Below are positions 967-60,746 of a stretch of 64,000 nucleotides of DNA, in pieces. Below the pieces are notes generated by a model. The model did no database searches and had not been told where the DNA came from. It worked only from the letters and a program-made list of their open reading frames with translations. The position numbers were made by a program, and so were the translations under genes. The DNA is from Octopus bimaculoides (lineage: Eukaryota), in contig NC_069000.1 of assembly GCF_001194135.2 (NCBI RefSeq), positions 6,309,244 through 6,373,243 on the forward strand. The letters are read 5' to 3'. Positions within the stretch are counted from its first letter, which is position 1, and each line of letters begins with the position of its first letter.

Positions 967-1117
967 ATATATATATATATAAAATGTGTGTATTGAAGTA
1001 ACAAAAACTAGTTGGTGAAGTTGTGTTGTAATAATGTTAACCAACATGTTCTGTACTGAAATTTGAACTTCAATCATTTCAAAATTCTCTTTTTTTTTTT
1101 AAAATTTTATTTTATAG

Positions 1118-1260
1118 TTCCTCCTTCAGTTGAAATCCCTCGAAGTGGAGATGGTAAAGAAGGTGAATCAATCACTTTAGTTTGTAAAGGAAAAGGTGTT
1201 CCAGTACCATCACTTACCTGGCAAAGAAGTAACGATGCTCCTTTCCCTATTGGTGAAGAG
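1118..1260 (+). CDS. NCAM: Exon, first half of Ig4 (VPPSVEIP...ITLVCKGKGVPVPSLTWQRS...GEE)
   Basis: tttatag acceptor, GAG|gttagc donor, Ig Cys and Trp motifs, phase 1 to 0. Confidence 0.93.
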
Positions 1261-1364
1261 GTTAGCAAAATTAACAATTGGTTGACAATGAAATTTCACA
1301 CGATTTTTTGATTAAAATGAGTTTTTCTTTATTTTCTACTTTACTATTTTATGTCTTTTAACAG

Positions 1365-1718
1365 TTGAATGGAGTATTAGTTAAAGAAACCAAGAATCGG
1401 CCAGATAAAGAATTGACTTTAACCATTGCTTCTCTGAAAGCTAGCGATGCTGATAATTACACTTGTTTTGGAGATAATGAGGCTGGTAACGATGCCAAGC
1501 GAACCTACCTCCGGGTTGAATATAAACCTGTTTTTATAAATACTCCAACTACTGCTTACAATTGGATGGGCAACAAAGCCAACATAACCTGCACTGCCAA
1601 AAGTTATCCCAAAGCTATAATATCATGGAAAAGGGATAAGGAGGAAATTAAAGGAGATACTGAGACGTATAAAATATTCAAAATAGAAGGTCAAGAACAG
1701 ATGACCAGCTTACTCCAA
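1365..1718 (+). CDS. NCAM: Exon, second half of Ig4 and first part of Ig5 (LNGVLV...DADNYTC...NITCTAKSYPKAIISW...SLLQ)
   Basis: ttaacag acceptor, CAA|gtaagt donor, D-x-x-x-Y-x-C motif, phase 0 to 0. Confidence 0.95.
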
Positions 1719-1798
1719 GTAAGTATCAACATATCAGATGGGCTATTTGGAAATTTGGGTTTGTGATGAATACAGTTGGTATTTTATGTCACACAAAC

Positions 1799-2055
1799 AT
1801 GATGGTGTGCTTAAGAAGTTTGCTTGCCAGCTGTATGATTTGCGGTTTAGTCCCACTGCATGATACCTGAGGCAAGTGCTTTCTATTATGGCACTGGGTC
1901 AGCCAAAGCTTTGTGAATGGATCTGATAGTTGGAAACTGAAAGAAAACCTGTCGTGTGTGTGTGTGTGTAGATGTGCTATACTGGGTGCTTCTTTTTCAT
2001 GACACCAGCATTTGTGACGTCACTATGTAACTCACAAGATAAGGACCCCCTCAAC
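1799..2055 (+). mobile_element. tRNA-derived SINE with internal microsatellite (family C, CORE-like)
   Basis: Head, degenerate ccttgggcaagt-type segment, gaaactgaaagaa and (TG)n. Related copies near 3806, 6790, 19830, 50098, 52361, 52981, 58492 and 59690. Confidence 0.7.
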
Positions 2056-2283
2056 TGAGTGTTAGTATATGCATGTGTGCAATTCATGCATGTGTGTCTC
2101 TTTGTTTTGACATCATGCCAGTTATTGTCATCATCTCGGCAACTATATCTGATGGACCGGCTACTTTGCCTATATAATTGTTCACTTCAAACTCAGTCTT
2201 TTTGTTCCTCTTCCTCTTATGCATTTCTCACATTTATAAAGGACAACCTCTCATAATAACATTTCCAGACCTATTTCTTGTGG

Positions 2284-2322
<39 letters not shown>

Positions 2323-2384
2323 ACTAGGCATGACCATTCATTTTAGTCATTTATTAAATGTATATTAAAACTTTATTGATTTCA

Positions 2385-2480
2385 CTTGGTTGGAGCCTGG
2401 TGTAGCCATCTGGTTTCACCAGTCCTCAGTCAAATCGTCCAACCCATGCTAGCATGGAAAGCGGACGTTAAACGATGATA
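2385..2480 (-). mobile_element. Short interspersed repeat with RTE-like tail (family D)
   Basis: Near-identical reverse complement of 52170-52270. Confidence 0.75.
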
Positions 2481-2708
2481 TGTGAGACAAATATGTTTGC
2501 TTGATATAAGACTGCAGATGGAACAGTATGATAATGTTGTTGTTGTGGTGCAATATGGAAATTGAATTGATTTTTTTAGTGGTAATAATAAAATACTGAC
2601 AGTTATTTCATAATTGAAGAAATCTATCTAATATTAGGAAATTGGATGTGAATTTAAAAAAAAAATCTTCCTGTGCAGTATTATTGACATTTTTGTTATT
2701 TTTGTTAG

Positions 2709-2814
2709 GTTAAGGTGACTCCTAGCAACGAGAATTCTGTATTTACTGACTATAAATGCAAAGCTTTCAGCATCAGAGATTCAACAGAGATAACAATAAC
2801 TTTAAAGAAAGCAG
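2709..2814 (+). CDS. NCAM: Exon, end of Ig5 (VKVTPSNENSVFTDYKCKAFS...LKKA)
   Basis: tttgttag acceptor, G|gttggt donor, Y-x-C motif, phase 0 to 1. Confidence 0.9.
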
Positions 2815-3593
2815 GTTGGTATGATTTTTTGTTTTTTTTTATTAAAATGTTACTTTCTTGTATCAATTATGAGACATTTAGTATTCTCTTGTCCTTGCCC
2901 ACATATGTCCACTGTCTCACTGTAAAATTGTTCATAGTTTGGATTTTTCAATCACATTCATTCTAAGCTAAGAAATAAAGTTTTAAAAAAAAAAAGCATT
3001 TTGTAGTGTTTCACTGAAATAGTTGTTGAAATGTATTGGGGGAAAATTCCTTTTCTGAGTTTTTAATGGTGTAGGAAAAATAGTGTGATATTGTTTAAAC
3101 TGTTAAAATCCTTTTTGGAGGCTTTTTGGTAGGAAATTCTTCCCAAAATGAAGTTGCTTCTTCTGGCACAGAAGAGCACTAAGTTCCAGTCTTTAAGCCC
3201 CTAAACAACAATTGTATTTGATTTATACTTTTAGGTGGTTCAGGATTGACTGGTGTGGATATCCACTCTTTAAGACTCTGTTAAACAGCTACTTAGGGCT
3301 TCTGCCATTTTCTTACTCCTTAATGATCTTTAACATTCACACGACTCTGTCAAGTATAAAGCTTATTTAGTAGCATTGTTTTGAACCAATTGTATTATCT
3401 TGTAGATTTGACATTTCAACGATGTGACTGTTAAGTTTTAGAATGGAATAGTATGAATATAACCTTGTGTAGATTTGAAATTTGAGATTTTTGAAGTATT
3501 GCTGTATGTAGATTTACGTGTGTACTTTTGTTGTATTCCATTAGTTTCATATATCTAAATAATATATGTGCATGTATCATCTAATTTTTACAG

Positions 3594-7326: not shown

Positions 7327-7525
7327 GTTCATATAAAAGAAAAAGAGCCCTGGGTAGTTGACGGCAGTAAGGAAAATGGAGACTATATGACAAAGACTGT
7401 TCAAGGAAAGACCTCTGCAGTAATTAGAAACTTAGAGTCTAATACATACTATGAGTTCCAGGTCGTAGCTACTAATAAAGTTGGAAACTCAAATCCACGG
7501 CCTGTGATTATTGTGACAAAAAAAG
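7327..7525 (+). CDS. NCAM: Exon, second half of FN3-2 (VHIKEKEPW...IRNLESNTYYEFQVVATNKVG...VTKK)
   Basis: acacag acceptor, G|gtaagc donor, FN3 Tyr-corner motif, phase 0 to 1. Confidence 0.93.
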
Positions 7526-8095: not shown

Positions 8096-8122
8096 ATTCA
8101 CCTGATAGTATTGAAGAATCTG
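8096..8122 (+). CDS. NCAM: 27-nt symmetric microexon (DSPDSIEES)
   Basis: T-rich tract + tatag acceptor, G|gtaaga donor, open in phase 1-1. Confidence 0.7.
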
Positions 8123-18062: not shown

Positions 18063-19236
18063 GTGATTCAAGTGATTCTTTTTTTCTTTCTTTTTTTTTT
18101 GTTAATCTTGCCATTAAGTCTTTCTGTACTAATTTTCATTTATAGCTTTTGAATTGACAAAACTTTTCCATAAATTAATATATTTATCTCTTTCAAAACT
18201 TAATAATCTTTCTATTTTAATGATTCTTTGCACAGTAAGGAAGGAGGTTACAAGTAACATTTAGAATAAAACTTTAGTTTAAGCATGTCAAAATTGAAAT
18301 ACATATATATTTATATATGTATATATATATATACTGATTGGTCATTACAATTTTCAAATATAATGGATTTTTTCTTTTTAAAGCCTATATAAATTTAATG
18401 GTTTTTCTCTCAATATAAATCTCCAATTTGTTCACTGATTTCATTGTCTATTGTACATTAGTTTCTGCTTAAGATGGAGGCATGTTTTAAAACCTGCAAT
18501 TAACCATCATAAGGATGAATTGAGCTGTTTTTTAATTAATCATTATAAATCTTAGTGATTTAATGTGGCAAGCTGGCAGAATCGTTAGCGTGCTGGACAA
18601 AATGCCAAGCATTTCTTTTGGCACTTTAAGTTCAAATTCTGCCAAGGTCAATTTTACCTATGATCCTTCCAAGATTGTTAAAATGAGTACCTGTCAAGTA
18701 CTGGCGTTGGTGTAATGCGCGCACGCACACATTCTTCAGATTTGCTGGCCTTGTGCCAAAATAAGAAGTTTTTGACAACAGCACAAGTATTTGTCAGCAT
18801 TTCCTTATGGTTTTATGTTTGTATATATTTTTTTAATGCTAATAATGCATTTCAAATATTACTATATAAATAAGGATAAGATCCATATTTTAAATAGCAA
18901 TCAAATCAAGTGACAGCATGAAAGTAAAAAAGAAACTATATAGGTTATATAATAATTATAAAAATTTATAAATAAGGGTCTCGAAGAGATACTACCATGC
19001 TTGAAATAGCAATCAAAACCTGACTCTAAAACCACATCATGTATTCAAAATACAGCACAAGGTGAAAGGACAAATAGACAAATAAAACCAGAGGGTGTGA
19101 AATTATCCAATTTTTACTGGGATTGAATTGTTCGACTAAAGGTGCATAGCTGCAGTCAAATGACTTAAACCAGTAAAAGAATTAATCTACACACACACAC
19201 AACCAGTATTTTGTGATAATGGTATTGAAAGCAAAA

Positions 19237-19453
19237 GGGCGGCGAACTGGCAGAATCGTTAGCACGCTAGGCGAAATGCTTAGCGGTATTTCATGTGTCG
19301 TTGCATTCTGAGTTCAAACTCCACCAAGGTCGACTTTGCCTTTCATCCTTTCGGGGTCGATTAAATAAGTGCCAGTTACGCACTGGGGTCGATATAATCG
19401 ACTTGACTTTGTTTGTCCCCTCTATGTTTAGCCCCCTGTGGGCAATAAAGAAA
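19237..19453 (+). mobile_element. SINE (family B)
   Basis: ggcggcgaactggcagaatcgttagc head and ctgagttcaaa B-box. Copies near 8388, 18565, 25142, 29404, 30921, 31068, 45279 (minus), 54993, 55208 and 55460. Confidence 0.85.
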
Positions 19454-20338: not shown

Positions 20339-20373
20339 CTAGGTTGAGGAAAAAGTTTGTGTGCTGTGTTGAT

Positions 20374-20412
<39 letters not shown>

Positions 20413-20880
20413 AAGACTTTATTCAAAAACAACTACTATTCTTTAAAATAAAGACCATCATTTTCCATGACCTTCTGCTAATGATCTGCAAGCTTTCAGA
20501 TTTCGTTAAAATACCAATCCCTTGGCTTTGAATTGAAAAATTCTTGACAGGCTTCTTCAACTTCATTGAATGACTCAAATCGGTGACCTTTCATAAAGTG
20601 CTGCTTTGATCGGAAGAGACCATAGTCAGATGGAGCAATGTCTGGACTATAGGCTGGATGCGGCAGAACTTCCACACCGTCCAATTCTTCAATCTTGTTA
20701 CTGGTTTTTCTGATGGTCTGCAGTTTGCATTGTCTTGTTGAAACAAAGCGCGTCTTCGAATATAGTGAGTCACCATTGAACACGGTGATATGAGCTGAAT
20801 GAACACACACACACACACCACAAAAATATATTAAAAAAGCATTATTTTAACACAGCACACAAACTTCTTCCTCAGCCTAA
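20339..20880 (-). mobile_element. Internally deleted mariner (DD34D) element
   Basis: 31-bp TIRs with 2 mismatches (taggttgaggaaaaagtttgtgtgctgtgtt). ORF 20496-20816 contains LPHPAYSPDIAPSDY, and QDNA appears in the adjacent frame. Confidence 0.9.
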
Positions 20881-24900: not shown

Positions 24901-25141
24901 CCAAAACATGAACCATGTTTGATGCATATTGATATTAAAGATACTATATTGCNNNNNNNNNNNNNNNNNNNNNNNNNGGGGGGGCATGTAGCAGAACATT
25001 GAACTAAGGAATACCACAAAGTACTTTACATTCCATGTAGAAAACAGCTTTATATTCCATGTTGCAGAAGAATATACAGAACTGAAGAATATCCAAAACT
25101 GTTTTGCTTTATGTAGTAGAACATAGTTTTGTTATTATTAA

Positions 25142-25365
25142 GGCAGTGAGCTGGTAGAATTGTTAGCATGCCAGGTAAAATGCCTAGTGGTATTTCATCT
25201 GTCCTTACATTTTTGTGTTCAAATTCTAGTATGGTCAACTTTACCTTTCATCCTTTCAGAGCTGATAAAATAAGTTCCAGTGAAGCACTGGGGGTTGGTG
25301 TAAACAACTGACCCCATTCCCTCAAAGTTGCTTGCCTTGTGTCCACATTTGAAACTTATTATTAT
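25142..25365 (+). mobile_element. SINE (family B)
   Basis: Similar to 19237, with (ATT)n tail. Confidence 0.8.
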
Positions 25366-29403: not shown

Positions 29404-29608
29404 AGCTGGCAAAATCGTTAGCATGCCGGACAAAATGTTGGCGGCATTTTGTCCGTTTTTACATTCGAAGTTCCACCAAGGTCGACTTTACCTTTCATCC
29501 TTTTGGGGGTTGATAAAACAAGTACCAGTTGAGCACTGGGGGTTGATGTAATCGACTTATCCCCTCCCTGAAATTGCTGGCCTTGTGCCAAAATTTGAAA
29601 TCATTAAT
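29404..29608 (+). mobile_element. SINE (family B)
   Basis: Similar to 19237 and 55460. Confidence 0.8.
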
Positions 29609-31431
29609 TATGGCTATTATGTTGGTAAAAACAAAGTTTACAAAACAGTTATTCCATTTGATTTTAAATGTTGTGTGTGTGTGTATGTATGTATATATAA
29701 ATAAAATGCGTGTGTGTATTCACTTGCATATTTTTTATTTCTTGGTTTTATTTTTGCTTTTAGACATGCACACATGCCTACACACATTTTTTTGTTTTGG
29801 TTTTTGTCAACTTTTTAGCTTCAAGTCCCTTTAGACCCTAGTAGTATTAGACCAACACTTGAGTCCCAACTATATTTTCCTTTATCTACTAGTATAGTTT
29901 CCCCCATACACATAGCCATTAGTTGTTGCAGCAGCAGTAGTAGTAGTAGCAGCCATGCACCACTTTCTGTCCTTGTTAGCAAGTACTTGTTGCACCTGAG
30001 CATTCTAGACAAGGTTTTACTTTATTCTTAGTACCACTTTCAAAACCAAATAACTGTTGCTGTGATGTTTATTAATGACTTTTGTATGTACTATTTATTA
30101 TAATTGTTATTATTTCATGAGTTTTTATCTATTTCAATGATCATCTCAGCTTCTATTATTTAACTTGTGCAGATATATAAACCCACAAGCTTATTTAGAT
30201 TGTCTTTATGCAATTTATGTTTAAATTTATAAGTTCTTTTTTTCATTTACTTAATGTTAATTTGGAGGAACTTGTGTACACCTGTGTAATGGTTTACCTG
30301 AGATAAATTTAGTAATTAATTGTTAATGAGTGGAACCATTACGTTATATCGGACATGTATGTCCACATTCAGAAGGTATAAGCCTTGATAACAATGATCA
30401 AAATGGAGGCACAAGCTATTAGATTTGGGAATATCCATGACATTGGTTAAGTAATCAAGAAAATTGTAATTTTACCCCAGGCAACTCAATATTTAATTTT
30501 CAAAATGGTTTTAATAAGAGTAAGGATAAATGTCATTGAGAAGTTTTTTCACATGGTTTATTTGCTTTTTCCCTTCAGTGTGTGTGTGTTTTATCTTTTG
30601 TTTTTCCCATAGGGTCGTGTTTTAGATTTAGAATTAATTGTGCATTAATTATGAAATGCAAAATGAATACGTTTAATAGGATGTGTGTATATAGAGAGAT
30701 AGAGATGTAATTTTCAGAGTTGGAAGTTCAGTTTCACCCCATCATTATTAGATGTTAGTGTTTCTACAGGAAAGCTCTTTAAATTTTATCAGTGTTTAGT
30801 GTTGTTAAATGTTTTTCTCCCTTAACTAAAATAGAAAAAGAACAAAAAAAAGCATTTCTGTTTGTCAATATATTTTTAAGTAGTTACAGTAATAATGTTA
30901 TTAGAATTATTGTTTAACATTCTGAGCTCAAATCTGCTGATGTCAGCTTTACCTTTCATCCCTCCAGGGGCAATATGATAAGTACCTGTTGAGCACTGAA
31001 ATTACTGTAATTAAATTCTCTCCCTCAAAATTTCAGGCTCTGTGCTTTAAATATAAAGTAATTGCTTCACATTCTGAGTTCAAATTCTGCTGAGGTCAAC
31101 TTTACCTTTCATCCCTCCAGGTACCAATCAAGTACTGGAATCAATGTATTCAATTAACACACACCCTCCCTGAAAAAATTATGGGCCTTGTGCCTATATT
31201 GGAAAGCATTTCTTTAATGATTTGTGTTTATTGAAAATCTCTAGATGTTTAGATGTTGTTATCACATCTCCACCAGCATATTGCCCTTGTTGGCAAGGTG
31301 CACAATTTCATGTTGTTACTAGTCAGACACCTAGTCAACATGGCAGAATAACCCAGATGGGAGGTGATGATGGTAGTCATGGGGTGAGGTTCGCATCAGA
31401 AAGATCAAATAACAAATCAGTTACTGAAATA

Positions 31432-32589
31432 CAGAATGCAAGGGGTATTTGAGGACATATGCGGTAATTCAATGAAACAACTCTAACCTAGCAAAAAACC
31501 AAATGTATTTGAATAAAAATGTCTACACATGTTCTTAATAAAGCTAACTTATAACATTATTCTATGAATCTACTTTTTACTTCATTGATGGCTGCAAAGT
31601 GGGACTGGAATTGTTGAATTGTTGCACTAAATGGTCCTTATTTGACATCCTTTGGACTTTGGTGGTCTTTAGTGACACTATGGCATTGTAAGGGTGTTGA
31701 TTGGTCTCCTTTTCAGTGATGTTCTGAACATAGTAATCCATGAAATTTAAATTTGGCATGCATGGAGGCCATGAGTTTGGAGTTACATGATCATAACCCA
31801 TTCTTGGGTTATGTGGGTGTTAAGTCTTGATGAAACACATTTGGCCTTCTACTACGTACTTCAACCATCCAGGGTTTAACAACCCTTTCCAGCACCTCTC
31901 CGTAACCAACATCATTAATTCTAAGACATAGAAAGATGTGAAGTGACACAACATGACCTTCATTACTCACTACTCCTAAAATCATAACAGTTGCTGGAAA
32001 TTTAGTGTACGTCAACTCTAGGATCATTGAAGGGTCTCTATACATAACCATCTATCGTTTCTCCTGTTAGATTTTGGCTCATCTCTGATGAGAAAAACCT
32101 CAGCCAATACCAAAACAAGCCATGTTTGTGAGGGTTTTACACCTTAAGGAACTGCTTGATGCTGGTCAGTTTTCTCGAGTCTTTGTACAAATAAATTGGT
32201 CTTTACTCAGTACATAGGACATGTATCAAATGTCCATATGCGCCACATTTCTGATAGTGTAATCCAACTCGTGAAGTTCTTAAACAATGGCCCTCATTGA
32301 TTTTTCTGGGATCATCATTTTCAACCTGTTGGATTAATTGTGGTATCTGAATGTCTAAGCTGAAACATTCCTGTGTGAGGCTTCTAACTTCATCTACACT
32401 TTTATGTACAAAAGCTCTTGCAGCATTTTAAGTGTTAGCAATTTCTAAAACATGGCAACAATCACTGAATGTCTTTTCATTTCTTGTATTAGCATTTTAT
32501 TTGCTGTGGCATATCTGAAAGAAATATAAACATTTTGTTTTGACGAGAGTAATATACTGATAATTTTCCTCAAATACCCTTACACCCTG
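31432..32589 (-). mobile_element. Decayed Tc1/mariner-superfamily element related to 13829-14627
   Basis: TA flanks and imperfect TIRs (cagggtgtaagggtatttgagga). Minus ORFs read KFPATVMILGVVSNEG...VFHQD and WPPCMPNLNFMDY. Confidence 0.85.
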
Positions 32590-33557: not shown

Positions 33558-33664
33558 TGGACACGGGTAGTCGAATAACGGATTCCACTGCATCTTTCAT
33601 CAGCAATTCTCACCTGTTAATGGCAGTGAATGCCTTCTTGTGTTGTCTGCTGGCACTGCTCTGA
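33558..33664 (+). CDS. NCAM: Alternative terminal exon encoding a GPI-anchor signal (VDTGSRITDSTASFISNSHLLMAVNAFLCCLLALL*)
   Basis: tttctgttcttttcag acceptor in phase 1. Small residues, a polar spacer and a 16-aa hydrophobic tail end exactly at TGA. Confidence 0.85.
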
Positions 33665-33730: not shown

Positions 33731-34132
33731 NNNNNNNNNNNNNNNNNNNNNNNNNNNNNNNNNNNNNNNNNNNNNNNNNNNNNNNNNNNNNNNNNNNNNN
33801 NNNNNNNNNNNNNNNNNNNNNNNNNNNNNNNNNNNNNNNNNNNNNNNNNNNNNNNNNNNNNNNNNNNNNNNNNNNNNNNNNNNNNNNNNNNNNNNNNNNN
33901 NNNNNNNNNNNNNNNNNNNNNNNNNNNNNNNNNNNNNNNNNNNNNNNNNNNNNNNNNNNNNNNNNNNNNNNNNNNNNNNNNNNNNNNNNNNNNNNNNNNN
34001 NNNNNNNNNNNNNNNNNNNNNNNNNNNNNNNNNNNNNNNNNNNNNNNNNNNNNNNNNNNNNNNNNNNNNNNNNNNNNNNNNNNNNNNNNNNNNNNNNNNN
34101 NNNNNNNNNNNNNNNNNNNNNNNNNNNNNNNN
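33731..34132. other. Assembly gap (402 N) directly after the GPI exon
   Basis: N run. Other gaps: 482-625, 9957-9970, 24953-24977, 36966-36975, 37854-37863, 41084-41093, 50005-50097. Confidence 1.
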
Positions 34133-35765
34133 ATTTGGAAATTGAAGCAAGACCCATTTTTTTTTAAGGACCTTTTTCTTTTTAAAGTTTTTAAATAAAA
34201 AAGCTTAGCTCGGCTCCTATGTGCACACATTTTGTGCCTCCATCATATTACCCTGTGGAGGATTGATATCTTTCAGTAACAGTTAAAGAATTCTCTTGGA
34301 CTGTGTAGAGACTCTCGGAATTTCTTTTTTTTTTTTTCTCTCCCCCAAATTAAATCAATCAGTAAAGCTGTCATGACTCAAACTTTCTAAAACTGGAGAG
34401 AAAGAAGGGGAAGGTCACGAGGAGAGGGGTCGGATGTTGTCCAGTCCCCCTCCCTCTCTCTCTCTCTCTCCCCCCAACTTCTTACAAGAGTGAAAGTTCA
34501 TTTTTATCTTTTTTCCCCCCTTTCTCTCTCTCCATTGTGCAGCCACTTGAGTTAGGGTGACCAGAACAAACCCCCACCACCACCACCACCAAAAAACTAA
34601 TAATAATAAATGAAAATGAATTTTCATAATTGTTTGAGAGCGCGTACCTGTGTGTATATGTATGCGTGCGTGTGTGTGCATATGCGTATGTGTGTATGTA
34701 TGTACATATGCTCCCACATGCATCCTATTAAGTTTGGCATTACACATTCCCTGATATAATTTGGCTCAGTTGGTGAAGTGTGCATAGCAAATTTATTTTA
34801 CTTTATTATTATTTTTTTTTCTGCAGTGCTTGATCTATTACTACACAACACTATTATAATTTATTTTAAACCCCACCCCATCTCTTTCTCTCTTCTCTCT
34901 CTGTGCAAATGTATATTTTTCACCATTGGGTGGGTGAGGTTTATTTTTTATGTTCTTTCATTTCATTTTTCTCTTCTATCTCTAAAAGTTGAGTAAACCT
35001 AGTCAACCATTCCTTAAATCTCTCCGAACCAACAAAATATTCCTCAATTACTATCTTACTCTAAAGTGTAAACCCCCTCCCTCTCCAATTTAAGTATAAA
35101 ATTTTTCTGTTCTTTTTAAATTCTCAAGTCTAGGCTGGTATTTAAAAAAAAATAATAATCCTTCAGTTTTGCTTATTTCATATTTTTAAAAATCAGCTTC
35201 TATGGTATTAAAATAGCTTTTATTTCTCCACCCCTTCCTGATTTTCTTTCTTTACCTGCTTTTTCGGTTATGCTTGGAAGTGATTGTTGATGTTGACATA
35301 GTATCAGGTATGTAAATATAGTCTACAATGTAATTAGTAGTATACCTGTTGAATTTTTTAAAATCACTGCCTTCATAAATTTTACAAGTCTCATCATTTT
35401 AATTTAGGAAACTTGAATTCAGCCACCAGTTTACAAGGGATGGAAATTGATATTTCTGTCTCAGTGACTATTATCTTTGGCATTATTACAATTACTACTA
35501 CATGGTTATAAATCTATTATTACACTTCATCATATACAATTATTAATTGCAGAAGCTTATTCTCCAAACTTATGACAATTATCAGTTAATAATATTATTA
35601 TTCTGGAAGGTTTTAAGTTGCTTATATTTTTTTTGTTTAATTAAAAAGAAAAAAAAAGCAAACAAAGAAACAAACATTATTAGCGATTTAAAATGACTTA
35701 CTTAAATGTCTTTATTCTTGTGGGGTTTTTAACTTTCCCCCCCTGATTAGTTCTATTGGAGGCTA

Positions 35766-35805
<40 letters not shown>

Positions 35806-35819
35806 CATACATACATACA

Positions 35820-35857
<38 letters not shown>

Positions 35858-36150
35858 GCATCTTATGTTTAGAAAGTGCCACTCACCTCTATTCTTCTGT
35901 TATGCATTTTGGGAGTTATGGTACACTTGAAGTTTAGTTGTTTCTGCTAATGGATTCAACCATCAATAATTCCTTGAGTGTCTTTTATCATCATAATTCA
36001 CCCTATGACAGCCTCAACTACTCGTTTTCTTTTTTTTTTTCTTTTGTGCGCGTGTGTGTATCTGTTTTTGTTTTGTATGTTGAACATCTTAGGCTTGTGG
36101 CAGAGGGGTGTGGGGTGAAGGCGAACTGGTCCTGGTGTTTATATATATAT

Positions 36151-36952
36151 ATAGGAAAATGAAAAATGATATGGCAGAATGCTAAACTGGAAGCATATTT
36201 TAATAAAGATTTCTCTAACCGGCTTTCGTTGCGAAGCAAATTTTCAAGAAGAGGGAGAATGAAAATGTTTTTTACAAAGTACAAAATGAAGGAAATAATA
36301 TATAAAAAAAATAATATATATAAAAATAAACATACCAATACATTATATTGTCTTTGAGCTTTTGAAGTTCAGTGGTAATTCATGTATATAATGGTTGGAA
36401 AAATAAGGATGCATGAGAATTGAGAGCTGTGTTAGGTTTAAAAAAAGGGTTAAAAGTTTGTGTTAAGCAGGAAGTGTGGTGTTAAAACAGGAAGTGTGTG
36501 TAAGGGGAGACAAATGTTCTTAGTTGGAGTTATGAACTCTTTTTTTCAACAGGAAGTTTGTCTGTTCCTAGGAGTTCATAACTCCAACTAAAAACATTTG
36601 TCTCCCCTTACACACACTTCCTGTTTTGACACCACACTTCCTGCTTAACACAAACTTTTAACCCTTTTTTTTAAACCTAACACTGCTCTCAATTCTCATG
36701 CATCCTTATTTTTCCAACCATTATATACATGAATTACCATTGAACTTCAAAAGCTCAAAGACAATATAATGTATTGGTATGTTTATTTTTTTAATATATT
36801 ATTTTCTTCATTTTGTACTTCCTTGTAAAAAACATTTTCATTCTCCCTCTTCTTGAAAATTTGCTTCGCAACGAAAGCCGGTTTGAGAAATCTTTATTAG
36901 AATATGCTTCCAGTTTAGCATTCTGCCTTATTATTATTTTTCATTTTCCTAT
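36151..36952. repeat. Long inverted repeat: arms 36151-36539 and 36572-36952 with a 32-nt spacer
   Basis: Direct reverse-complement comparison shows about 6 substitutions and a few small indels. Confidence 0.9.
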
Positions 36953-37346
36953 TATTTCTCCACGTNNNNNNNNNNCATTTGTCTCCCCTTACACACACTT
37001 CCTGTTTTGACACCACACTTCCTGCTTAACACAAACTTTTAACCCTTTTTTTTAAACCTAACACTGCTCTCAATTCTCATGCATCCTTATTTTTCCAACC
37101 ATTATATACATGAATTACCATTGAACTTCAAAAGCTCAAAGACAATATAATGTATTGGTATGTTTATTTTTTTAATATATTATTTTCTTCATTTTGTACT
37201 TCCTTGTAAAAAACATTTTCATTCTCCCTCTTCTTGAAAATTTGCTTCGCAACGAAAGCCGGTTTGAGAAATCTTTATTAGAATATGCTTCCAGTTTAGC
37301 ATTCTGCCTTATTATTATTTTTCATTTTCCTATTATTTCTCCACGT
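36595..37346 (+). repeat. Identical 371-bp direct duplication flanking a 10-N gap (probable assembly artefact)
   Basis: 36595-36965 equals 36976-37346, separated only by Ns. Confidence 0.85.
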
Positions 37347-38204
37347 GCGGTTAACACAACCCTACTATTTGCTGACTTATATATATACATACACATATAT
37401 ATATATATATAAATGACTGTACAAGCATGAATCTCTGAAGGCATGTCTTTCTCCAGAGTTAGAAATATTTAATGACAGCACAGTGCTTGATTTTTTTGAG
37501 ATGTTCAGTGTTCTTGTCCCCCTCAATCAGAAACAACAAACAAACAAGTACAAAATATTTAAATTTCAGTGTAAATCTATAGACTTGGAAAAAAAAACAA
37601 ATCACAAAAGTCACTCCTTCAAAATCAAACTTAGGTTCTGTTTTATATCATTTTTGAATTAATCTTAAGTTCCTGTTTTTGTTCACTTGTTTATTTCTTT
37701 TGCTACATGTTTTTCATATTTTCCCAGATCTAGTCATTCATGTCTCAAGTTGAAAAAAAAAAACCTCAAAAAGCCTAAGTTTTAAAATGTTATCAGCTAA
37801 TCTCTCTTCCATTAAAAGCAAAAAAAAAAAAAAAATCAATCAATAGCTTATTANNNNNNNNNNAAATTTCAGTGAAATGAGTTTTTTTTTTTTTTTTTTC
37901 CCAAAGATTAATTTTAATCTTTTAGATTAGTATTAGAAAACTTTGACAACACACAAAAAAAAAGATCAAAAATATTCTTTTTTTATTGTTATTGGGTGGG
38001 GTGTATATTTATTTTTGTAAAAGAAAAATTATTTGAGATTTTTAAAACTGTGGCTTAGCTAGTTATTATTGGAGTCATCTGTTATAATTTTTTAGACTGA
38101 CTTACTGGGGTGTGTGGGGATTAATGTATTTACAAATTTTTAATAAGTTTTAGAAATATTTTAACAGATAATCACTATGTGATTCTTCCTAGATTGCTGG
38201 ATAT

Positions 38205-41083: not shown

Positions 41084-41093
41084 NNNNNNNNNN

Positions 41094-44343: not shown

Positions 44344-45021
44344 CATTGGTTCTCAACCAAGGTCCATGTGTCCCTGGGATGTCCATATAAGATTCTTTTC
44401 AAGATCACAAAAGCAAAATAATAGAGTGGAGATCCATGGTACAAATTGCTTTAGACATATTTATAGGAAGAAACGGCCAGGTTTCTTTCTCCTCACGCTT
44501 AACATTGTTCAACAGGTTTCCAGTCCCTCGAACATGTCCTCTCCAAGAAAACATGTGAAAAAGCAAAATGGGAATTTTTAAAAGAGTAATTGTAAAACTA
44601 GCTTTTAAACATTGAATGTCAGTGAGCAGAGGTTCTCAACCATTTTTTATCTAGGGACCCCTTTGATTACTATTTTATTCTGGTGGGGCCCCATCCCTTA
44701 GCCTTTCGATGTTTAAAAACTAATTTAATAAAACCTTCTTTCAGAATTCCCATTTTGTTTTTCACATATTCCTCCTGTGTAGTTTGAACTATGTAGAATG
44801 AAAGAAACCTAGCTGTTTCTTGCAATACCAATATTTAAATCGGAATTTTTTCAGGGATCCTTGAAATATTATTATGGATTCACAGTGTAATATTTTCTTC
44901 CGGGGCCCCCTCCAAAATCTTATATGGACCTTGGTTGAGAACCACTGGTCTATGAGGGTCTGCCAGGATTAGATAGTAATCAAAGGGATCCGTAAGTAGA
45001 AAGAATGGTTGAGAACCACTG
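44344..45021. mobile_element. hAT-type MITE with a related MITE (44627-44947) nested in opposite orientation
   Basis: CAGTGGTTCTCAACC-type termini. The 8-bp flanks gactaaac and gacttaac match 7/8. Confidence 0.8.
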
Positions 45022-45278
45022 GACTTAACCTTTTAAAGGTGGTGCTCCAGCATGGCTGTAGTCTAGTGACTGAAGCAAGATAAAAGATTTAATTCCTTTT
45101 AACATATGCACAAGTTCATGATTTCTGGGGAGGGTGTAGTTGATTAAATCTGACAACCACCATCCCCAGCAATTCTTTATCGGTACTTATTGGACCTGGA
45201 TGGGATGAAAGGTGAGATTGACTTTAGTAGGGTTTGAACTCAGAATATAAAGAGTTGAACCAAATTTTGGCAGAAGGT

Positions 45279-45488
45279 CAGTGATTTCAAGGGAAGGGCG
45301 TGGTGGGGGGGTAAGTCGATTACATTGACACCCCACCCTCAGTACTCACTGGATACTTGTTTTACTGACCCCACAAACGATGAAAGGCAAAGCTGACCTC
45401 AGCAGAATTTGAACTCGGAACGTAAAGATTGACGAAATACCACTAAGCTTTTTGCCCAGCATGCTAACAATTTTGCCAGTTCCCTGCC
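45279..45488 (-). mobile_element. SINE (family B)
   Basis: Reverse complement of the family B body. Confidence 0.8.
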
Positions 45489-46537
45489 TTTCTTGAATGA
45501 AATATTGCTTCAAGGTGTTTTATTAGAAGCTTAAACTCTTTGCAATCTCCAGTTCAAAGTAAGAATATTAATAATGAAGATGGCAGTTAGTTGTATCCTG
45601 CACTACATAGGCATTTGCTTCATGACTACGTTTCCCGGTTCGAAATTTCCCCAAGATACTTGATGAAGGCTGGAGGGTATATCAGCCGAGACGTTGTGTT
45701 AGCAACAAAAAAGATGAGGACAAATGTCTGTTAAATGTAAATAATGTAAATGGTAGGGTGTGTGGTTTGAGGAAAATTTAGCAGTTCTTTCTACAAAATA
45801 GAAACTCCCTTGCTTCAGCTTAGTATTAAGCCTGGATTTGTGATTATTAGCTCTCTCTCTCTTTTTCTCTCTCTATGGAGCCTGACTTAGTGTTTGGATT
45901 GGTTTGTGGTAATTAATGCCAAATTGGTCCCTCCCTTGGCCTCAATTCTCCCTCAGTTGCAGTTAAGGTAGGATAACATAAAAAGATAATTAACCTTTTT
46001 TTTTTTTTTTTTAACTTAAATTGAGAATGTGAAGACGATATTGCATGTGAGAGGTGTTACCTGTTCTGATTTGGTTTCATACAAAAATACGTTTGGTTAA
46101 AGCAGGAATTTGATATTTGTTGGTAAATTTTCATGATCTCTAAATCATGTTTGTTTTCTTGACAGGAAATGAATGACTGACTTGCATGTAATAATAAGGA
46201 GACTCTCACTCTGAATTCGTCTAGAATCATAGGAGATGAGGGTTTATTATTTTGATAGCAAACTTGTAAAAGTATCACACAGTTGGATTCACCTTTATAT
46301 CTACTGAGAAGTGTTGAAATCTGAATGTGAACAGATTTGGAAAACATACTTGAAAGGGTTATTAAATAAGCAATCCGATACACACACCTCTATAAGTCTC
46401 TATACCAGTGATTCTCAATCTTAGGGCTGCCGCATGAGGCCCTCATGCATCCTTCTAGCAGTCCTCAACAGCATTCCCTCTATAAATATAAATCTTTCTT
46501 TAATTGACTTATGTTTTACCTTTTCTTTTTTTCTCTT

Positions 46538-48780: not shown

Positions 48781-50097
48781 AGTAATAGACCCATAAATAT
48801 ATTTACTAAATAAACACAACAAATAAAGTAAAATAGGTAAAAAAAAATAAATACGTGAAATAGGAATTCTATAATATTCTAAAATGAACATTCCGATTCC
48901 CAGCTTATGATTTATCATATTCAAGGGAAAAACATTTAAACTAAAATTTTTTTGGTTGAAATATCATTTAAAGTTAAAAGACAATTTGTTGAATTAAAAA
49001 TATTAACGTTTGAGATTCTGTATTACTAACAATATACAAAGCATAAACTTATCATCTCTAAAGCTCACTCGAGCAGATCAAAATAACTACTGAAGGAAAA
49101 GTTCACAGCAAAATGTTAAATGAAATAAAATATCACAAGAGTTTAAATTTTAAAATGAAAGGTTGAGTGGTTTAATTTTTTAAATTATTTTTCTTTGGTA
49201 AGGTTTTCCATATGATTCATCATATGTTAGGCACATATCATACATTGAGCATTCCCTAATTAAATCCAGTGAAATCCCAGAAAAACAAAATCTTATGCTG
49301 GCTTTCCTTTAGTACTACTATAATGTATGGGAAAAGGAGCATTTAGTTAGATTTATCATAATGGGCAGGACCTGTGAATATTTCACGGAATAAATGGTAA
49401 ACTTATTGGGTTACTTCTGAAAGCTTCATCCAAAAACCTGTAAGTGTAGCCTGTATTGTGCCCTGTATCAAAAGATGGTCGCTCATCTGCTTATCGTTGA
49501 AAAATGAAGGAAATTGGAATACGATGATTCCTTAATGCACAATTCTATACACTCAATACACAACACTCTCCTGCTCTCTCACACTTTATCACACCTTCTT
49601 TTCTCTTTCCTTTTTCTTTCACTCTTTGCTTTTCCCTTCAACAAATCACATGAAAGCATTACAGACAGGCCAATAAGTAATGGTGGCGGGGGTGGGGGGA
49701 GAACTTAGTTAAAAAAAAGTCTACACATTTCACTCACCACCTCCCCTCCCATCTCCACCCTCTACCATTCCCGCTCATCCCCATCCCTCCCCCTTCAACT
49801 AATCACATGGAAGTGTTACGGATAGGCTAAGTAATGTAGCAACAAGCAGAATTATTATAAGATTTCTATACAAGAAACATTGAAAAAATTCACTCATCTA
49901 AAACTTTACCAGTTTGGGCCATAAAAGTGCATTTATTGTAGGGTCAGTATTTTGGAAATCATGGAATTTTTATTTTTTTTATTGTTCCCTAAAAAAATCA
50001 GTTTNNNNNNNNNNNNNNNNNNNNNNNNNNNNNNNNNNNNNNNNNNNNNNNNNNNNNNNNNNNNNNNNNNNNNNNNNNNNNNNNNNNNNNNNNNNNN

Positions 50098-51853: not shown

Positions 51854-51891
<38 letters not shown>

Positions 51892-51892
<1 letters not shown>

Positions 51893-52064
51893 GGTTCGGC
51901 AAGCATTGCTTCACCACACACCGAAAATTAGAAATAGCAGTCAAAACTACTATTTCTCTACCAACAGTATTGCTGTTTTGGGAGTTGTATTTTGGTAGAG
52001 AAATAGTAGTTTTGACTGCTATTTCTAATTTTCGGTGTGTGGTAAAGCAATGCTTGCTGATCCC
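51892..52064. mobile_element. Foldback MITE / hairpin: 73-bp arms, 27-nt loop, TA flanks
   Basis: Arms 51892-51964 and 51992-52064 are reverse complements with 3 mismatches. Confidence 0.8.
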
Positions 52065-52169
52065 TAAATTTTAATTATGTTTATATAAGTTTACCGATAA
52101 TGGCTTTTTAACACACCGAACTACTTGGTAAAATTACTAATTATTAATTTTTACCCTATATCTTTCGTC

Positions 52170-52305
52170 GTCGTCGTCGTCGTCGTTTAACGTCCGCTTT
52201 CCATGCTAGCATGGGTTGGACGATTTGACTGAGGACTGGTGAAACCAGATGGCTACACCAGGCTCCAGTCTGATTTGGCAGTGTTTCTACAGCTGGATGC
52301 CCTTG
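52170..52305 (+). mobile_element. Family D repeat
   Basis: Starts with (GTC)n then tttaacgtccgctttccatgc and ends cagctggatgccctt. Confidence 0.75.
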
Positions 52306-54633: not shown

Positions 54634-54992
54634 AGCTGCCCCCGTGCCATCAAAATTGATGGCTAATTGTAGTATTTTATATATAAATATGAACAGTAAA
54701 TCAAATCGAGACACCTGTCAATGTTACTGAAAGAAAGCTGGTTCACACATACAAACATTCACATACTTCCCTGGCACAGTCACACACAAATACTCACACA
54801 AAGTTGAAATGCTGTTTGATTCTTCTTTTCAGCATTGAATGTTCACCATCCCACTTCCACACAGTCGAAACGCTCCCACCACCAGCTTACTGTCACCCCT
54901 TCCTTCCTTATTCATCTATCACCCCACCTCCTTCTCTCATTCATATGTTGTAATGGAGAAAAATTACTAGAGTATTATTATAGTAGATTATT

Positions 54993-55420
54993 GAGCCGGC
55001 AGAATCGTTGGCATGCCAAATGAAATGCTTAGCTGTATTTCACTCATCGCGACATTCTGAGCTCAAATTCCGTTATGGTTGACTTTGCCTTTCATTGTTT
55101 CAGGGCCAATAAATTAGGGGTCGATGTAATCAACTAGTCCCCTCCTCCACCACCAAATTTCAGGCCTTGTGCCTATATTAGAAGGGATTATTATTATTAT
55201 TATTAATGCAGTGAGCTGGCAGAATTGTTAGCACGCTGGGCAAAATGCTTAGCTCCATTTCATCTGGGTTCAAATGTTCCGGGTTCAAATTCTGTTGGGA
55301 TCAACTTTGCCTTTTGTCTTTTCGGGGTCTATAAACTAAGTATCAGTTGAGTACTGGGGTCAATGTAATTGACTTACCTCTGCTGTTCAAACTTGCCGGC
55401 CTTGTGCCAAAATTTGAAAC

Positions 55421-55459
<39 letters not shown>

Positions 55460-55665
55460 GGCAGTGAGCTGGCAGAATCCTTAGCATGCTGAGGCAAAAT
55501 GTTTAGTTGCATTTCGTCCGTCTTCACGTTCTGAGTTCAAATTCTGCCGAGGTCGACTGTGCCTGTCATCCTTTTGGGGGTTGATAAATAAAGTACTGGC
55601 ATTGATGTGATTGCCTTACCCCCTCCCCACAAATTTCAGGCCTTGTGCCTATAGCAGAAAAGATT
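54993..55665 (+). mobile_element. Three head-to-tail family B SINEs
   Basis: Starts at 54993, 55208 and 55460, separated by (ATT)n tails. Confidence 0.85.
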
Positions 55666-57706
55666 AATGTTACCATCCTCATTTTCATGGTTTTGGTCTG
55701 AAATCAAATATATTTTTAGGTCTGCAGCTTTTCTCAATCTCTCTCAATGCTGAAGAATCTACAGATTCATAAATATTTGTCTGTGGAATTTAAAAACGAA
55801 AACAGTAAACAGAATAAACATTAACTCTTAGTCTTGAAATGCATTTTTATTCCATCTGCTTTTTTCCAAAAAATGTTTGGTCATTATATATATATATATT
55901 TCTAAATTTCTTTCCAATACTATGCATGGAATATCAGATAAAACATTTTGAATAGGTCTGTATCTAGACAGATACCTGCGAAATATTATTATTATGTATG
56001 TTTTTATAAACTGATTTTTTTCTTCTACACAACTGCAGATTTTTAAGAGCTTTTTATTAGTATGTCTCTGTGTATTTTATAATTAATCATAATAATAATG
56101 ATAATTATCTTCTCCTCCATATGGCTTCTGCTGCAGGACACAATAACATACTACCTGCTTATTTAGTCCTACAATAAATTGTACTGCTAACTTTCTCTCT
56201 CAGCTCAAATCTGATTCTTTTCTGCTCATTCTAATTATGCCTCGTGAGATGGGGTTTCGCTCTGAGTCTCGTGTTTCTGCTTCTCAAGATCGCAGGTTTG
56301 GTTCTGGTTGCTATTTCTAACTATTCAATTGGTTACATCAATACTAGGAGCACTGCCTTGTCACTCTGAAGGTGGGGAAACAAGAAGAGTGTAAATTTAC
56401 AGTAAGCTGAATTAAAACGTACCTAGAAATAGCAATGACAATAAAGATGAAACTGTTTAGGTGATAGAGCATGTTGATTTAATGAAACAGGTGATATTTG
56501 CCACAGAAATGATACCAAGGAAGGAGGACTGAAAGGTAAACAGTTGCTTGTCTGACTCCACCGTGCAGGAATTACCAATAGGAAGGAGATGTGATAAAAC
56601 ACAAAAAACCATTTCCTCTTGGAGGCTAACATGGAGAAGAATATACAGTAAAACAATCAATCAACAAATAGAAGTGCTCGAAGCGGCATTGGGTAAAATA
56701 GAGATGTGTTGTACACAAGCATGGGAAGACCTTCACTGTTGAAATTGTTGCAGGAGAGGAATTCTCCTTGTTGACAATTGGTGTAGAAAACATACCATTG
56801 AGCTGTGAATGGTGACAGGCATAGAAAGAAATCTGTTTTAATATGAAGACAAAAGCTGCTTTAGTAGGAAAATAACTGTTTTCGTTAGAAGGGAACTATT
56901 ATGATGAGATGACAAATTTTTTATAAGAAGAAAACGGTTTTTGTAGGTGAAAACTCTTTTTAATACGATAAAAATACTAGGGAAGATATAGGGACGAAAC
57001 AAGTTGATACGGATGACAGGAGAGGTGGAATCTCTTTTCAAAGTATTTTACGTTTCCTCTTTCTGTTTTCTGCTAACATTTATTGTTTCAGTGACTAACA
57101 TCTAATGTGTTGATTGTCAAAGATTGGCAGCTTTTATATTATTTCTTCCTTCATGTATATATACACACACACACACACACATACCGTAATTGATGGTATA
57201 TAAAACGCCCCCAACCCCACAAAAAAAACAAAACGCATTCCAGGTCCTATATGCAAAGTTGGACCTATATTAAATGCTTTAATACGCTAAAAGTCTTTTT
57301 TTTTTCCTGAATATGCATTACTGAAATTCAGGTGCATCTAATATACCTGTATGTCTTTTATGCCATCAAAGTTTGTGTGTATGTATATACACACACACAC
57401 ACACCTCTCTGTATTTAAGAGCTTTGTATTAATTAAATCTATTGCGTGGTTTTTCATGTTGTTTAATGTTTACCTGAAGCTATTTATTTTCTCGGATTTC
57501 TCATTAATGCTGAAATTTTATTTATTCAAGTCTACTAAATGCTGCCTTCCTTCCTTCTGTTCTTTCTTTCTGCTCTGTGTTTATCACAATCATTATTTAG
57601 TCGTAAACGTGCAACCTGTTTTATTACACGATCTGGTTTGATACTACCACCTTGACCTTAGATGCTCATGGCTAATAACACTGGTACACCATGCTGTTTA
57701 ACACTA

Positions 57707-60529: not shown

Positions 60530-60746
60530 TAGAGAACAAGGAAGTTCCGTTAACTGCTGCTTCGACTGGAATCAGTTCCGGAGGAGTTGCTGGTTTGATA
60601 ATTGCGTTGATCTTAATTATCCTTATAATACTCGACTTGATTTGTTACTTCAAGTTTGAGAAAGGTGTTACAATGTTTTTGGTTAGCACCTGCAAGAAAG
60701 GGTCTTCTGCCAAGGACAAGTCCACAGATGTGGAGGCTGGTGCGAG
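60530..60746 (+). CDS. NCAM: Transmembrane and juxtamembrane exon (VENKEVPL...GGVAGLIIALILIILIILDLICYFKFEKGVTMFLVSTCKK...GA)
   Basis: tttctattttag acceptor in phase 1, AG|gtatgt donor in phase 2, hydrophobic helix with the NCAM-type D-x-x-C-Y-F motif. Confidence 0.92.

What the first reader, a model, noticed from the sequence alone, without database searches (positions are those of the whole stretch)
36151..36952. ~800-nt near-perfect hairpin in the putative 3'UTR: candidate ADAR or endo-siRNA substrate
Seen: arms of ~385 bp with a 32-nt loop, from sequence not matching the window's SINEs. In the sense RNA the substitutions I found form three G-U wobbles, one A-C mismatch (A36592 opposite C36519) and two U-U pairs, so the arms are diverged rather than identical. 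CAGGAAGT recurs twice per arm and once in the loop. Known: coleoid cephalopods edit neural RNA heavily, ADARs act on long duplexes and favour A-C mismatches, and long UTR duplexes can affect localisation or be diced. Inference: a regulatory duplex specific to the GPI isoform, and intronic in TM pre-mRNA. Caveat: the adjacent gap and duplicated contig end show the assembler struggled here.
Basis: partly seen in the sequence, partly recalled or inferred. Interest (0 to 1): 0.7.

Follow-up and report, generated by a model that had tools for sequence, protein, structure and literature searches.

The report
Young 0.8-kb inverted repeat in NCAM-like intron
The 800-base hairpin is real, but it looks like an ordinary young foldback-type repeat in a large intron of an NCAM-like adhesion gene, able to form double-stranded RNA and be edited, with no evidence that it regulates anything.

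Summary
Arms 36147-36539 and 36572-36955 flank a 32-nt loop, with 377 aligned columns and 8 substitutions. RNA folding energy is -599 kcal/mol (z = -56). The third "arm" at 36976-37346 is an exact 371-nt copy of the contig end before a 10-N gap, so it is an unmerged assembly overlap. Distinct outer flanks and diverged arms argue against a fold-back assembly chimera.

The host gene is a + strand NCAM-family gene. I located a plausible GPI-signal exon (33558-33664) and the TM exon (60530-60746). The hairpin is therefore intronic in TM pre-mRNA. Its place in the GPI 3'UTR is unproven: it lies 2.5 kb past the stop, after five poly(A) hexamers and a 402-N gap.

The element is non-coding, matches no Rfam family and has no other copy in the window. 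It has short internal subrepeats and an ambiguous TA flank. A mariner relic and two smaller hairpin repeats lie nearby.

Best reading: a young foldback/MITE-like repeat, or a local inverted duplication, that would be hyper-edited by ADAR whenever it is transcribed. The endo-siRNA reading is disfavoured by the mollusc literature. A regulatory role is unsupported. No cephalopod genome or RNA data were available, so copy number and editing are untested.

The parts
36147..36539 (.). Left arm of the inverted repeat. The outer end reads (TA)n|GGAAAATGAAAAATGA.
   Evidence: alignment; fold
36540..36571 (.). 32-nt unpaired loop. It contains one CAGGAAGT and a 5-6 bp mini-stem.
36572..36955 (.). Right arm of the inverted repeat. 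The outer end reads TCATTTTTCATTTTCC|TATTATTTC.
36454..36501 (+). 20-nt tandem subrepeat (2.6 copies) carrying CAGGAAGT twice. It is mirrored in the right arm around 36610-36657, and a third degenerate copy forms the loop.
36293..36326 (+). 16-nt tandem duplication (AAATAATATATAAAAA, 2.1 copies) present only in the left arm. It produces the 15-nt bulge.
36966..37346 (.). 10-N gap plus an exact 371-nt repeat of 36595-36965. This is an unmerged contig overlap, not a third arm. The real right flank resumes at 37347 (GCGGTTAACAC...).
   Evidence: (D3)
33558..33664 (+). Candidate GPI-anchor signal exon of the NCAM-like gene. It has a polypyrimidine tract and AG acceptor, phase 1, a hydrophobic C-terminal tail, and a TGA stop at 33662-33664.
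   Evidence: inference from phase compatibility
60530..60746 (+). Transmembrane exon (VENKEVPLTAASTGISSGGVAGLIIALILIILIILDLICYFKFEKG...) with a phase-1 acceptor.
7327..7525 (+). Last FN3 exon, with a phase-1 donor. The 27-nt mini-exon DSPDSIEES follows at 8096-8122.
1060..2820 (+). Ig-domain exons of the same gene. The best solved-structure match is NCAM2.

Best explanation
This is a real, evolutionarily young, non-coding inverted repeat of about 0.8 kb. It is most likely a foldback-type (palindromic) non-autonomous DNA element that landed at a TA in a (TA)n tract. Less likely, it is a local inverted duplication.

It lies in the roughly 27-kb intron between the GPI-signal exon and the TM exon of a + strand NCAM-family gene. 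Shown: the structure, its position relative to the exons, and its lack of coding or known-RNA features.

Inferred: whenever RNA polymerase reads through it, the two arms snap back into a duplex of about 385 bp. Read-through is certain in TM-isoform pre-mRNA if the gene model is right, and possible in a long GPI-isoform 3'UTR. By established ADAR biology such a duplex would be promiscuously hyper-edited (A-to-I) and then removed with the intron.

The duplex is a by-product of a selfish or neutral repeat, not a dedicated regulator. Dicing into siRNAs is unlikely in a mollusc.
For: Structure is real:
- The arms differ by 8 substitutions and 23 nt of indels, so this is not a perfect strand-switch chimera.
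- The outer flanks are different sequences.
- One contig spans left flank, both arms and 14 nt of right flank. A second contig independently repeats the right arm plus flank at 100% identity.

Young and decaying:
- Arm substitution divergence is 2.1%. The window's SINE-like copies differ by 15-30%, and a relative's orthologous contig differs by 19%.
- The differences include slippage duplications, as expected for neutral decay.

Non-coding, no known RNA:
- The longest internal ORFs are 64-72 aa and have no homologue among 5.8 billion and 1.84 billion proteins.
- Rfam gives nothing.

TE-like traits:
- The arms make up about 96% of the element.
- There are internal tandem subrepeats near the centre.
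- TA sits on both sides of GGAAAATG...CATTTTCC.
- The same window holds a mariner relic with its TIRs (20340-20879; SETMAR/Mos1 E = 1e-13).
- It also holds two smaller palindromic MITE-like hairpins. One (51889-52066, z = -25) also abuts a (TA)n tract.

Context and literature:
- Octopus has an exceptionally high density of long near-perfect dsRNA loci and of hyper-editing. Palindromic repeats can be edited on their own (PMC5625713).
- Most metazoan editing targets young repeats (PMC9989829).
Against: - No second copy of the arm was found anywhere. There is none in the 64-kb window, none as ORFs in the protein collections, and none in metagenome or prokaryote contigs. None of these covers a cephalopod genome properly, so multi-copy status, the key TE criterion, is untested.
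- The assembler read through both arms, which hints at low copy number.
- The TA 'duplication' is trivial in a TA-rich context, and no other TSD length fits.
- Five of the six transitions give G.U rather than A-C in the sense RNA. The sense strand is also 19 kcal/mol more stable than the antisense. This is a weak hint (binomial P = 0.11) that sense-strand pairing could be under selection.
- Transcription and editing were not observed.
Confidence: 0.6

Rival explanations
1. Local inverted duplication, not a transposon. A replication template switch or fold-back repair copied about 390 bp of pre-existing intron in reverse, leaving a 32-nt spacer. The locus is single-copy. The consequences for RNA are the same as in the best explanation.
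For: - There is no other copy in the window or in any searchable collection.
- There is no convincing target-site duplication.
- A short spacer is typical of template-switch products (established knowledge).
- A short-read assembler traversed both arms, which suggests unique k-mers (inference).
Against: - The identity ends sharply at both outer ends with TA on each side.
- Internal subrepeats and neighbouring palindromic MITE-like elements and mariner relics fit a TE origin.
- Copy number is genuinely untested.
Confidence: 0.22
2. The hairpin is a functional duplex in the GPI-isoform 3'UTR. Through ADAR editing, nuclear retention or localisation, or masking of the two AAUAAA hexamers inside the left arm (36202, 36325), it controls GPI versus TM isoform output.
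For: - The GPI exon lies upstream on the same strand.
- The next canonical AATAAA after the hairpin is at 38665, so a long UTR is possible.
- There is a G.U over A-C bias in the sense strand.
- IRAlu-type 3'UTR duplexes do regulate mRNAs in mammals (established knowledge).
Against: - Five poly(A) hexamers and a 402-N gap precede the hairpin.
- Both strands fold nearly equally well.
- The arms carry slippage indels, including a 15-nt bulge.
- Very low arm divergence implies a recent origin, not long-term conservation.
- There are no expression data.
Confidence: 0.07
3. Assembly artefact. There is only one arm in the genome, and the palindrome arose from mis-joining, for example of two haplotypes or of two dispersed copies.
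For: A 10-N gap and a 371-nt duplicated contig end lie immediately next to it. This shows that the assembler had trouble here.
Against: - The arms are not identical.
- The palindrome stops at the arm ends, and the two outer flanks are unrelated. A haplotype fold-back would continue into the flank.
- The loop is unique and non-palindromic.
- The right-arm junction is supported by two contigs.
Confidence: 0.07
4. hpRNA-type endo-siRNA locus. The hairpin is diced into 21-22-nt siRNAs that silence a gene or transposon with arm homology.
For: The arm length and short loop resemble Drosophila hpRNA loci (established knowledge).
Against: - A mollusc-wide survey found no dedicated siRNA Dicer/Ago and no detectable endo-siRNAs, including in O. 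bimaculoides tissue (PMC12479628).
- There is no target-like homology in the window.
Confidence: 0.03

Closest known systems
Foldback elements and palindromic MITEs (Drosophila FB, Galileo, Tetris; the palindromic Harbinger-derived repeat of Xenopus tropicalis)
   Same: - It is non-coding and almost entirely made of two long inverted arms with a short spacer.
- Tandem subrepeats lie towards the centre.
- It sits in an intron next to other DNA-transposon relics.
- The frog repeat forms dsRNA by itself and is heavily edited (PMC5625713).
   Different: - No second copy and no unambiguous target-site duplication could be shown.
- The subrepeats are few (2-3 copies), far fewer than in FB or Galileo.
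- The termini resemble no superfamily consensus that I could test.
Inverted Alu pairs (IRAlus) in human introns and 3'UTRs
   Same: It is a long intramolecular duplex in a pol II transcript. That makes it the classic promiscuous ADAR substrate, usually without a specific function.
   Different: It is a single compact palindrome with a 32-nt loop, not two independent insertions of a high-copy SINE. Its presence in a mature 3'UTR is not shown.
Drosophila hpRNA loci (endo-siRNA hairpins)
   Same: The geometry matches: arms of several hundred bp and a short loop.
   Different: The host phylum apparently lacks the siRNA branch (PMC12479628). No target homology is known, and no small-RNA data were available.
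NCAM / apCAM / Fasciclin II genes with alternative GPI and TM terminal exons
   Same: The host gene has Ig and FN3 exons. A GPI-signal exon with its own stop is followed, far downstream, by a TM exon in the same phase.
   Different: Orthology to a named gene was not established, and no annotated cephalopod protein was retrievable.

Membership tests
Foldback / palindromic MITE (class II non-autonomous transposon) | Long terminal inverted repeats forming most of the element | tested here: met
   Arms of 393 and 384 nt in an 809-nt element, with 8 substitutions over 377 aligned columns
Foldback / palindromic MITE (class II non-autonomous transposon) | No transposase or other coding capacity | tested here: met
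   The longest internal ORFs are 64-72 aa. There are no homologues.
Foldback / palindromic MITE (class II non-autonomous transposon) | Target-site duplication flanking the termini | tested here: inconclusive
   TA (or TAT, with shifted ends) sits on both sides, but the left flank is a (TA)7 tract. No 3-10-bp duplication fits.
Foldback / palindromic MITE (class II non-autonomous transposon) | Multiple dispersed copies in the genome | not testable with these tools
   There is no copy in the 64-kb window. No eukaryotic genome collection was available. Protein-index and metagenome scans were empty.
Foldback / palindromic MITE (class II non-autonomous transposon) | Internal tandem subrepeats in the arms (FB-type) | tested here: met
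   A 20-nt unit in 2.6 copies and a 16-nt unit in 2.1 copies. This is modest.
ADAR hyper-editing substrate | Intramolecular reverse-complement match of at least 50 nt at 80% identity or more within a few kb | tested here: met
   About 385 bp at 92% identity with a 32-nt loop, and MFE -599 kcal/mol. The criterion is the one used in PMC9989829.
ADAR hyper-editing substrate | Transcribed in ADAR-expressing tissue, with clustered A-to-G RNA-DNA differences | not testable with these tools
   No RNA-seq was available. Transcription is inferred only from the intronic position.
3'UTR inverted-repeat regulatory element (IRAlu-like) | Lies inside the mature 3'UTR of an mRNA | tested here: inconclusive
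   It lies 2.48 kb after the stop. Two AATAAA and three ATTAAA hexamers and a 402-N gap precede it.
hpRNA / endo-siRNA locus | Host has a siRNA-type Dicer/Ago pathway and small RNAs map to the arms | not testable with these tools
   The literature reports no such pathway in molluscs (PMC12479628). The taxon of the window is unverified.
hpRNA / endo-siRNA locus | Arms homologous to a target gene | tested here: inconclusive
   No homology in the window. The rest of the genome was not searchable.
Known structured RNA or miRNA family (Rfam) | Match to a covariance model at the gathering score | tested here: not met
   No hit at gathering score in the whole window. Around the locus only microsatellite noise appeared, plus one sub-threshold MIR1507 hit over the hairpin centre (36511-36601) at E = 0.89.
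NCAM-family IgSF adhesion gene (host gene) | Ig plus FN3 ectodomain with alternative GPI-signal and TM exons | tested here: met
   Pfam Ig_3, I-set and fn3. NCAM2 is the best solved-structure hit, E = 5e-31. The GPI and TM exons are phase-compatible.

The most novel reading that the evidence does not exclude
The hairpin is single-copy and retained by selection in a long alternative 3'UTR of the GPI-anchored NCAM/apCAM-like isoform. Its duplex sequesters two AAUAAA signals and is melted by ADAR editing. Editing level would then tune where the transcript ends or whether it leaves the nucleus, and so set the GPI:TM isoform ratio in neurons. The five symmetric ETS-type CAGGAAGT sites at its centre could add a DNA-level enhancer role.
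Probability: 0.05. Interest if true: 0.7.

Novelty: new member of a known kind. Interest (0 to 1): 0.25.

Why it matters
If the ordinary reading is right, this is one more example of the long, near-perfect intramolecular duplexes already reported to be unusually common in octopus-like genomes. Such duplexes are thought to soak up ADAR hyper-editing. It is useful as a positive-control locus for editing or dsRNA-sensing studies, but it is not a discovery.

It would matter only if the hairpin proved to sit in the mature GPI-isoform mRNA and to be conserved. It would then link RNA editing to the choice between lipid-anchored and transmembrane forms of a synaptic adhesion molecule.

The practical value now is an assembly correction. 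Positions 36966-37346 should be collapsed.

Tried and rejected
- Rfam over 30-44 kb at E <= 1 and over the whole window at gathering score gave only TA/CA microsatellite look-alikes of mir-297/466 and nothing on the hairpin. There are no tRNAs.
- I searched for other copies through the protein index. Concatenated ORFs from all frames of the arm gave 619 word candidates, none at E <= 0.01. An exhaustive HMMER run of the 72-aa arm ORF against 1.84 billion representatives gave 0 hits.
- I searched for an orthologous or empty site using concatenated ORFs from both flanks plus the GPI and TM exons. Nothing scored at E <= 10.
- The only relative retrieved was a 2.1-kb Logan genomic contig (SRR11869384). 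It covers the Ig exons at 81% nucleotide identity and lies far from the hairpin. The run accession appears in no held paper.
- Exact-pattern scans of the metagenome (2) and prokaryote genome (1) collections with arm 23-24-mers gave 0 hits.
- The flanks are unique in the window, so no paralogous empty site exists here.
- TSDs of 3-10 bp (hAT, PIF/Harbinger, piggyBac, P, Mutator types) were checked by eye and none fits.
- Similarity of the termini to the TIRs of the neighbouring mariner relic is only about 12 of 20 positions, by eye, and was not pursued.
- The haplotype fold-back chimera idea was rejected because the palindrome does not continue into the flanks.
- Literature searches for cephalopod foldback or MITE families returned nothing specific.

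Full report
**Observation**

Reading 35500-37800 and searching for repeats shows a large inverted repeat at the reported place. A gapped alignment of the left side against the reverse complement of the right side defines three parts:
- left arm 36147-36539
- a 32-nt loop at 36540-36571
- right arm 36572-36955

There are 377 aligned columns and 8 substitutions. blastn gives about 92% identity once indels are counted.

In the sense (+) RNA the substitutions are:
- five G.U wobbles: 36168/36935, 36200/36900, 36292/36805, 36372/36740, 36483/36628
- two U.U pairs: 36216/36884, 36428/36684
- one C-A: C36519/A36592

The largest is a 15-nt excess in the left arm (8 nt + 7 nt, split by three aligned bases), caused by a 16-nt tandem duplication (36293-36326).

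The + strand folds at -598.6 kcal/mol against -157 +/- 8 for shuffles (z = -56). The - strand folds at -579.2 kcal/mol. The structure is therefore far beyond chance and is not specific to one strand.

These occurrences are copies of a 20-nt subrepeat next to the loop (36454-36501), with a degenerate third copy forming the loop itself.

**Assembly**

The 10-N gap at 36966-36975 is followed by an exact 371-nt repeat of 36595-36965. This is an unmerged overlap of two contigs, not a third arm. The real right flank continues at 37347.

I consider the hairpin itself real, for four reasons:
- The arms differ by substitutions and indels, whereas a strand-switch chimera would be perfect.
- The palindrome stops at the arm ends and the two outer flanks are unrelated. 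A fold-back of two haplotypes would continue into the flank.
- The loop is unique.
- The right-arm junction is present in both contigs.

**Context**

Stop-to-stop ORFs on the + strand show Ig exons (1060-1308, 1362-1763, about 2709-2820) and an FN3 exon (7327-7525). Pfam confirms Ig_3, I-set and fn3. The best solved-structure match is NCAM2 (E = 5e-31).

The splice phases are consistent throughout:
- The FN3 exon ends in phase 1.
- A 27-nt mini-exon (8096-8122, DSPDSIEES) keeps phase 1.
- A scan for ORFs with hydrophobic C-termini found 33558-33664. It has a polypyrimidine tract and AG acceptor in phase 1 and encodes VDTGSRITDSTASFISNSHLLMAVNAFLCCLLALL followed by a stop. This is a typical GPI-signal shape.
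- The TM exon (60530-60746) also has a phase-1 acceptor.

It starts 2.48 kb after the GPI stop. Between the two lie AATAAA at 34194 and 34605, ATTAAA at 34349, 35207 and 35640, and a 402-N gap. Membership of the mature GPI 3'UTR is therefore not shown. Two further AATAAA hexamers sit inside the left arm.

**What it is**

The element has no coding capacity. Its longest ORFs are 64-72 aa, and they have no relatives in either protein collection. It matches no Rfam family.

It has no other copy in the window and does not match the window's SINE-like families, whose copies are 70-85% identical. Arm divergence is only 2.1% in substitutions. That is far less than the 19% seen between the window and the one orthologous contig I could retrieve from a relative (Logan SRR11869384). 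The inverted repeat is therefore young, or else homogenised.

Several traits fit a foldback or palindromic MITE:
- The arms form nearly the whole element.
- Subrepeats lie near the centre.
- TA sits on both sides of GGAAAATG...CATTTTCC.
- The left end abuts a (TA)n tract.

The neighbourhood supports this. It contains a mariner relic with its TIRs (20340-20879; transposase fragment matching SETMAR/Mos1 at E = 1e-13). It also contains a 178-nt near-perfect palindrome at 51889-52066 that likewise follows a (TA)n tract (z = -25), and a third small inverted-repeat element at 44559-44762.

The decisive criteria could not be tested, because no eukaryotic genome collection is available here. Those criteria are several copies in the genome, a clear target-site duplication, or an empty site. 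Every indirect route came back empty. A local inverted duplication therefore remains a serious rival.

**How it most likely works**

This part is inference from established ADAR biology and the literature. Any transcript containing both arms will fold back at once into a duplex of about 385 bp. Duplexes of this kind are the main substrate of promiscuous A-to-I hyper-editing across animals.

Porath et al. report that Octopus bimaculoides has an exceptionally high fraction of loci able to form long near-perfect dsRNA, and by far the strongest hyper-editing signal. They also report that a palindromic repeat can be edited without a partner (PMC5625713). Another study reports that most editing targets young repeats (PMC9989829).

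A survey of 32 molluscs, including O. bimaculoides tissue, found no dedicated siRNA pathway and no Dicer-type endo-siRNAs. It suggested that editing may deal with such dsRNA instead (PMC12479628). This disfavours the endo-siRNA option.

Nothing in the sequence argues for a dedicated regulatory role. The only hint is that five of the six transitions are G.U rather than A-C in the sense strand (binomial P = 0.11), with a 19 kcal/mol advantage for the sense fold.

**Verdict**

- The hairpin is a plausible ADAR substrate and is intronic to the TM form.
- 3'UTR membership, regulation and siRNA production are unsupported.
- The cephalopod origin of the window could not be verified.

This is a new member of a known kind, and of low to moderate interest.

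Noticed in passing
window 51889-52066: A second near-perfect palindromic element of about 178 nt, with 96-nt arms at 90% complementarity by the repeat finder and a 27-nt spacer. Its ends read TTAGGGTTCGGCAAGC...GCTTGCTGATCCCTAA. RNA MFE is -132.6 kcal/mol (z = -25). Like the main hairpin, it directly follows a (TA)n tract.
   Followed up: partly
window 20340-20879: An internally deleted mariner-type element. It has 58-nt imperfect TIRs (TAGGTTGAGGAAAAAG...) enclosing a - strand transposase C-terminal fragment (20499-20846) that matches SETMAR/Mos1 at E = 1e-13.
   Followed up: partly
window 44559-44762: A small inverted-repeat element with 58-nt arms (78% complementary) and an 88-nt spacer. 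It looks MITE-like.
   Followed up: no
window 31580-32427 (- strand): ORFs that look by eye like a Tc1-type DDE transposase relic (…WPPCMPNLNFMDYYV…). Neither Pfam nor the PDB sequence search gave a hit.
   Followed up: partly
window 18567-18762, 19235-19404, 25129-25365, 29404-29620, 45261-45490, 54973-55672 and others: At least four SINE-like repeat families of 100-250 nt, with copies 70-85% identical. One 88-nt piece (2391-2478 against 52180-52267, inverted) is 98.9% identical and ends in a (GAC)n-type tail.
   Followed up: no
window 36966-37346, and other gaps at 482-625, 9957-9970, 24953-24977, 33731-34132, 37854-37863, 41084-41093, 50005-50097: The scaffold has eight N-runs. The run at 36966 is flanked by an exactly duplicated 371-nt contig end, so the scaffold is 381 nt too long there. 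The other 10-N gaps may hide similar unmerged overlaps.
   Followed up: partly
window 36468-36643: Five copies of the ETS-type core CAGGAAGT lie within 176 bp, arranged symmetrically about the loop. They are explained by the 20-nt subrepeat. Whether they bind a factor is unknown.
   Followed up: partly
window 8096-8122: A 27-nt phase-preserving mini-exon candidate (DSPDSIEES) with good splice sites, between the last FN3 exon and the GPI and TM exons.
   Followed up: no
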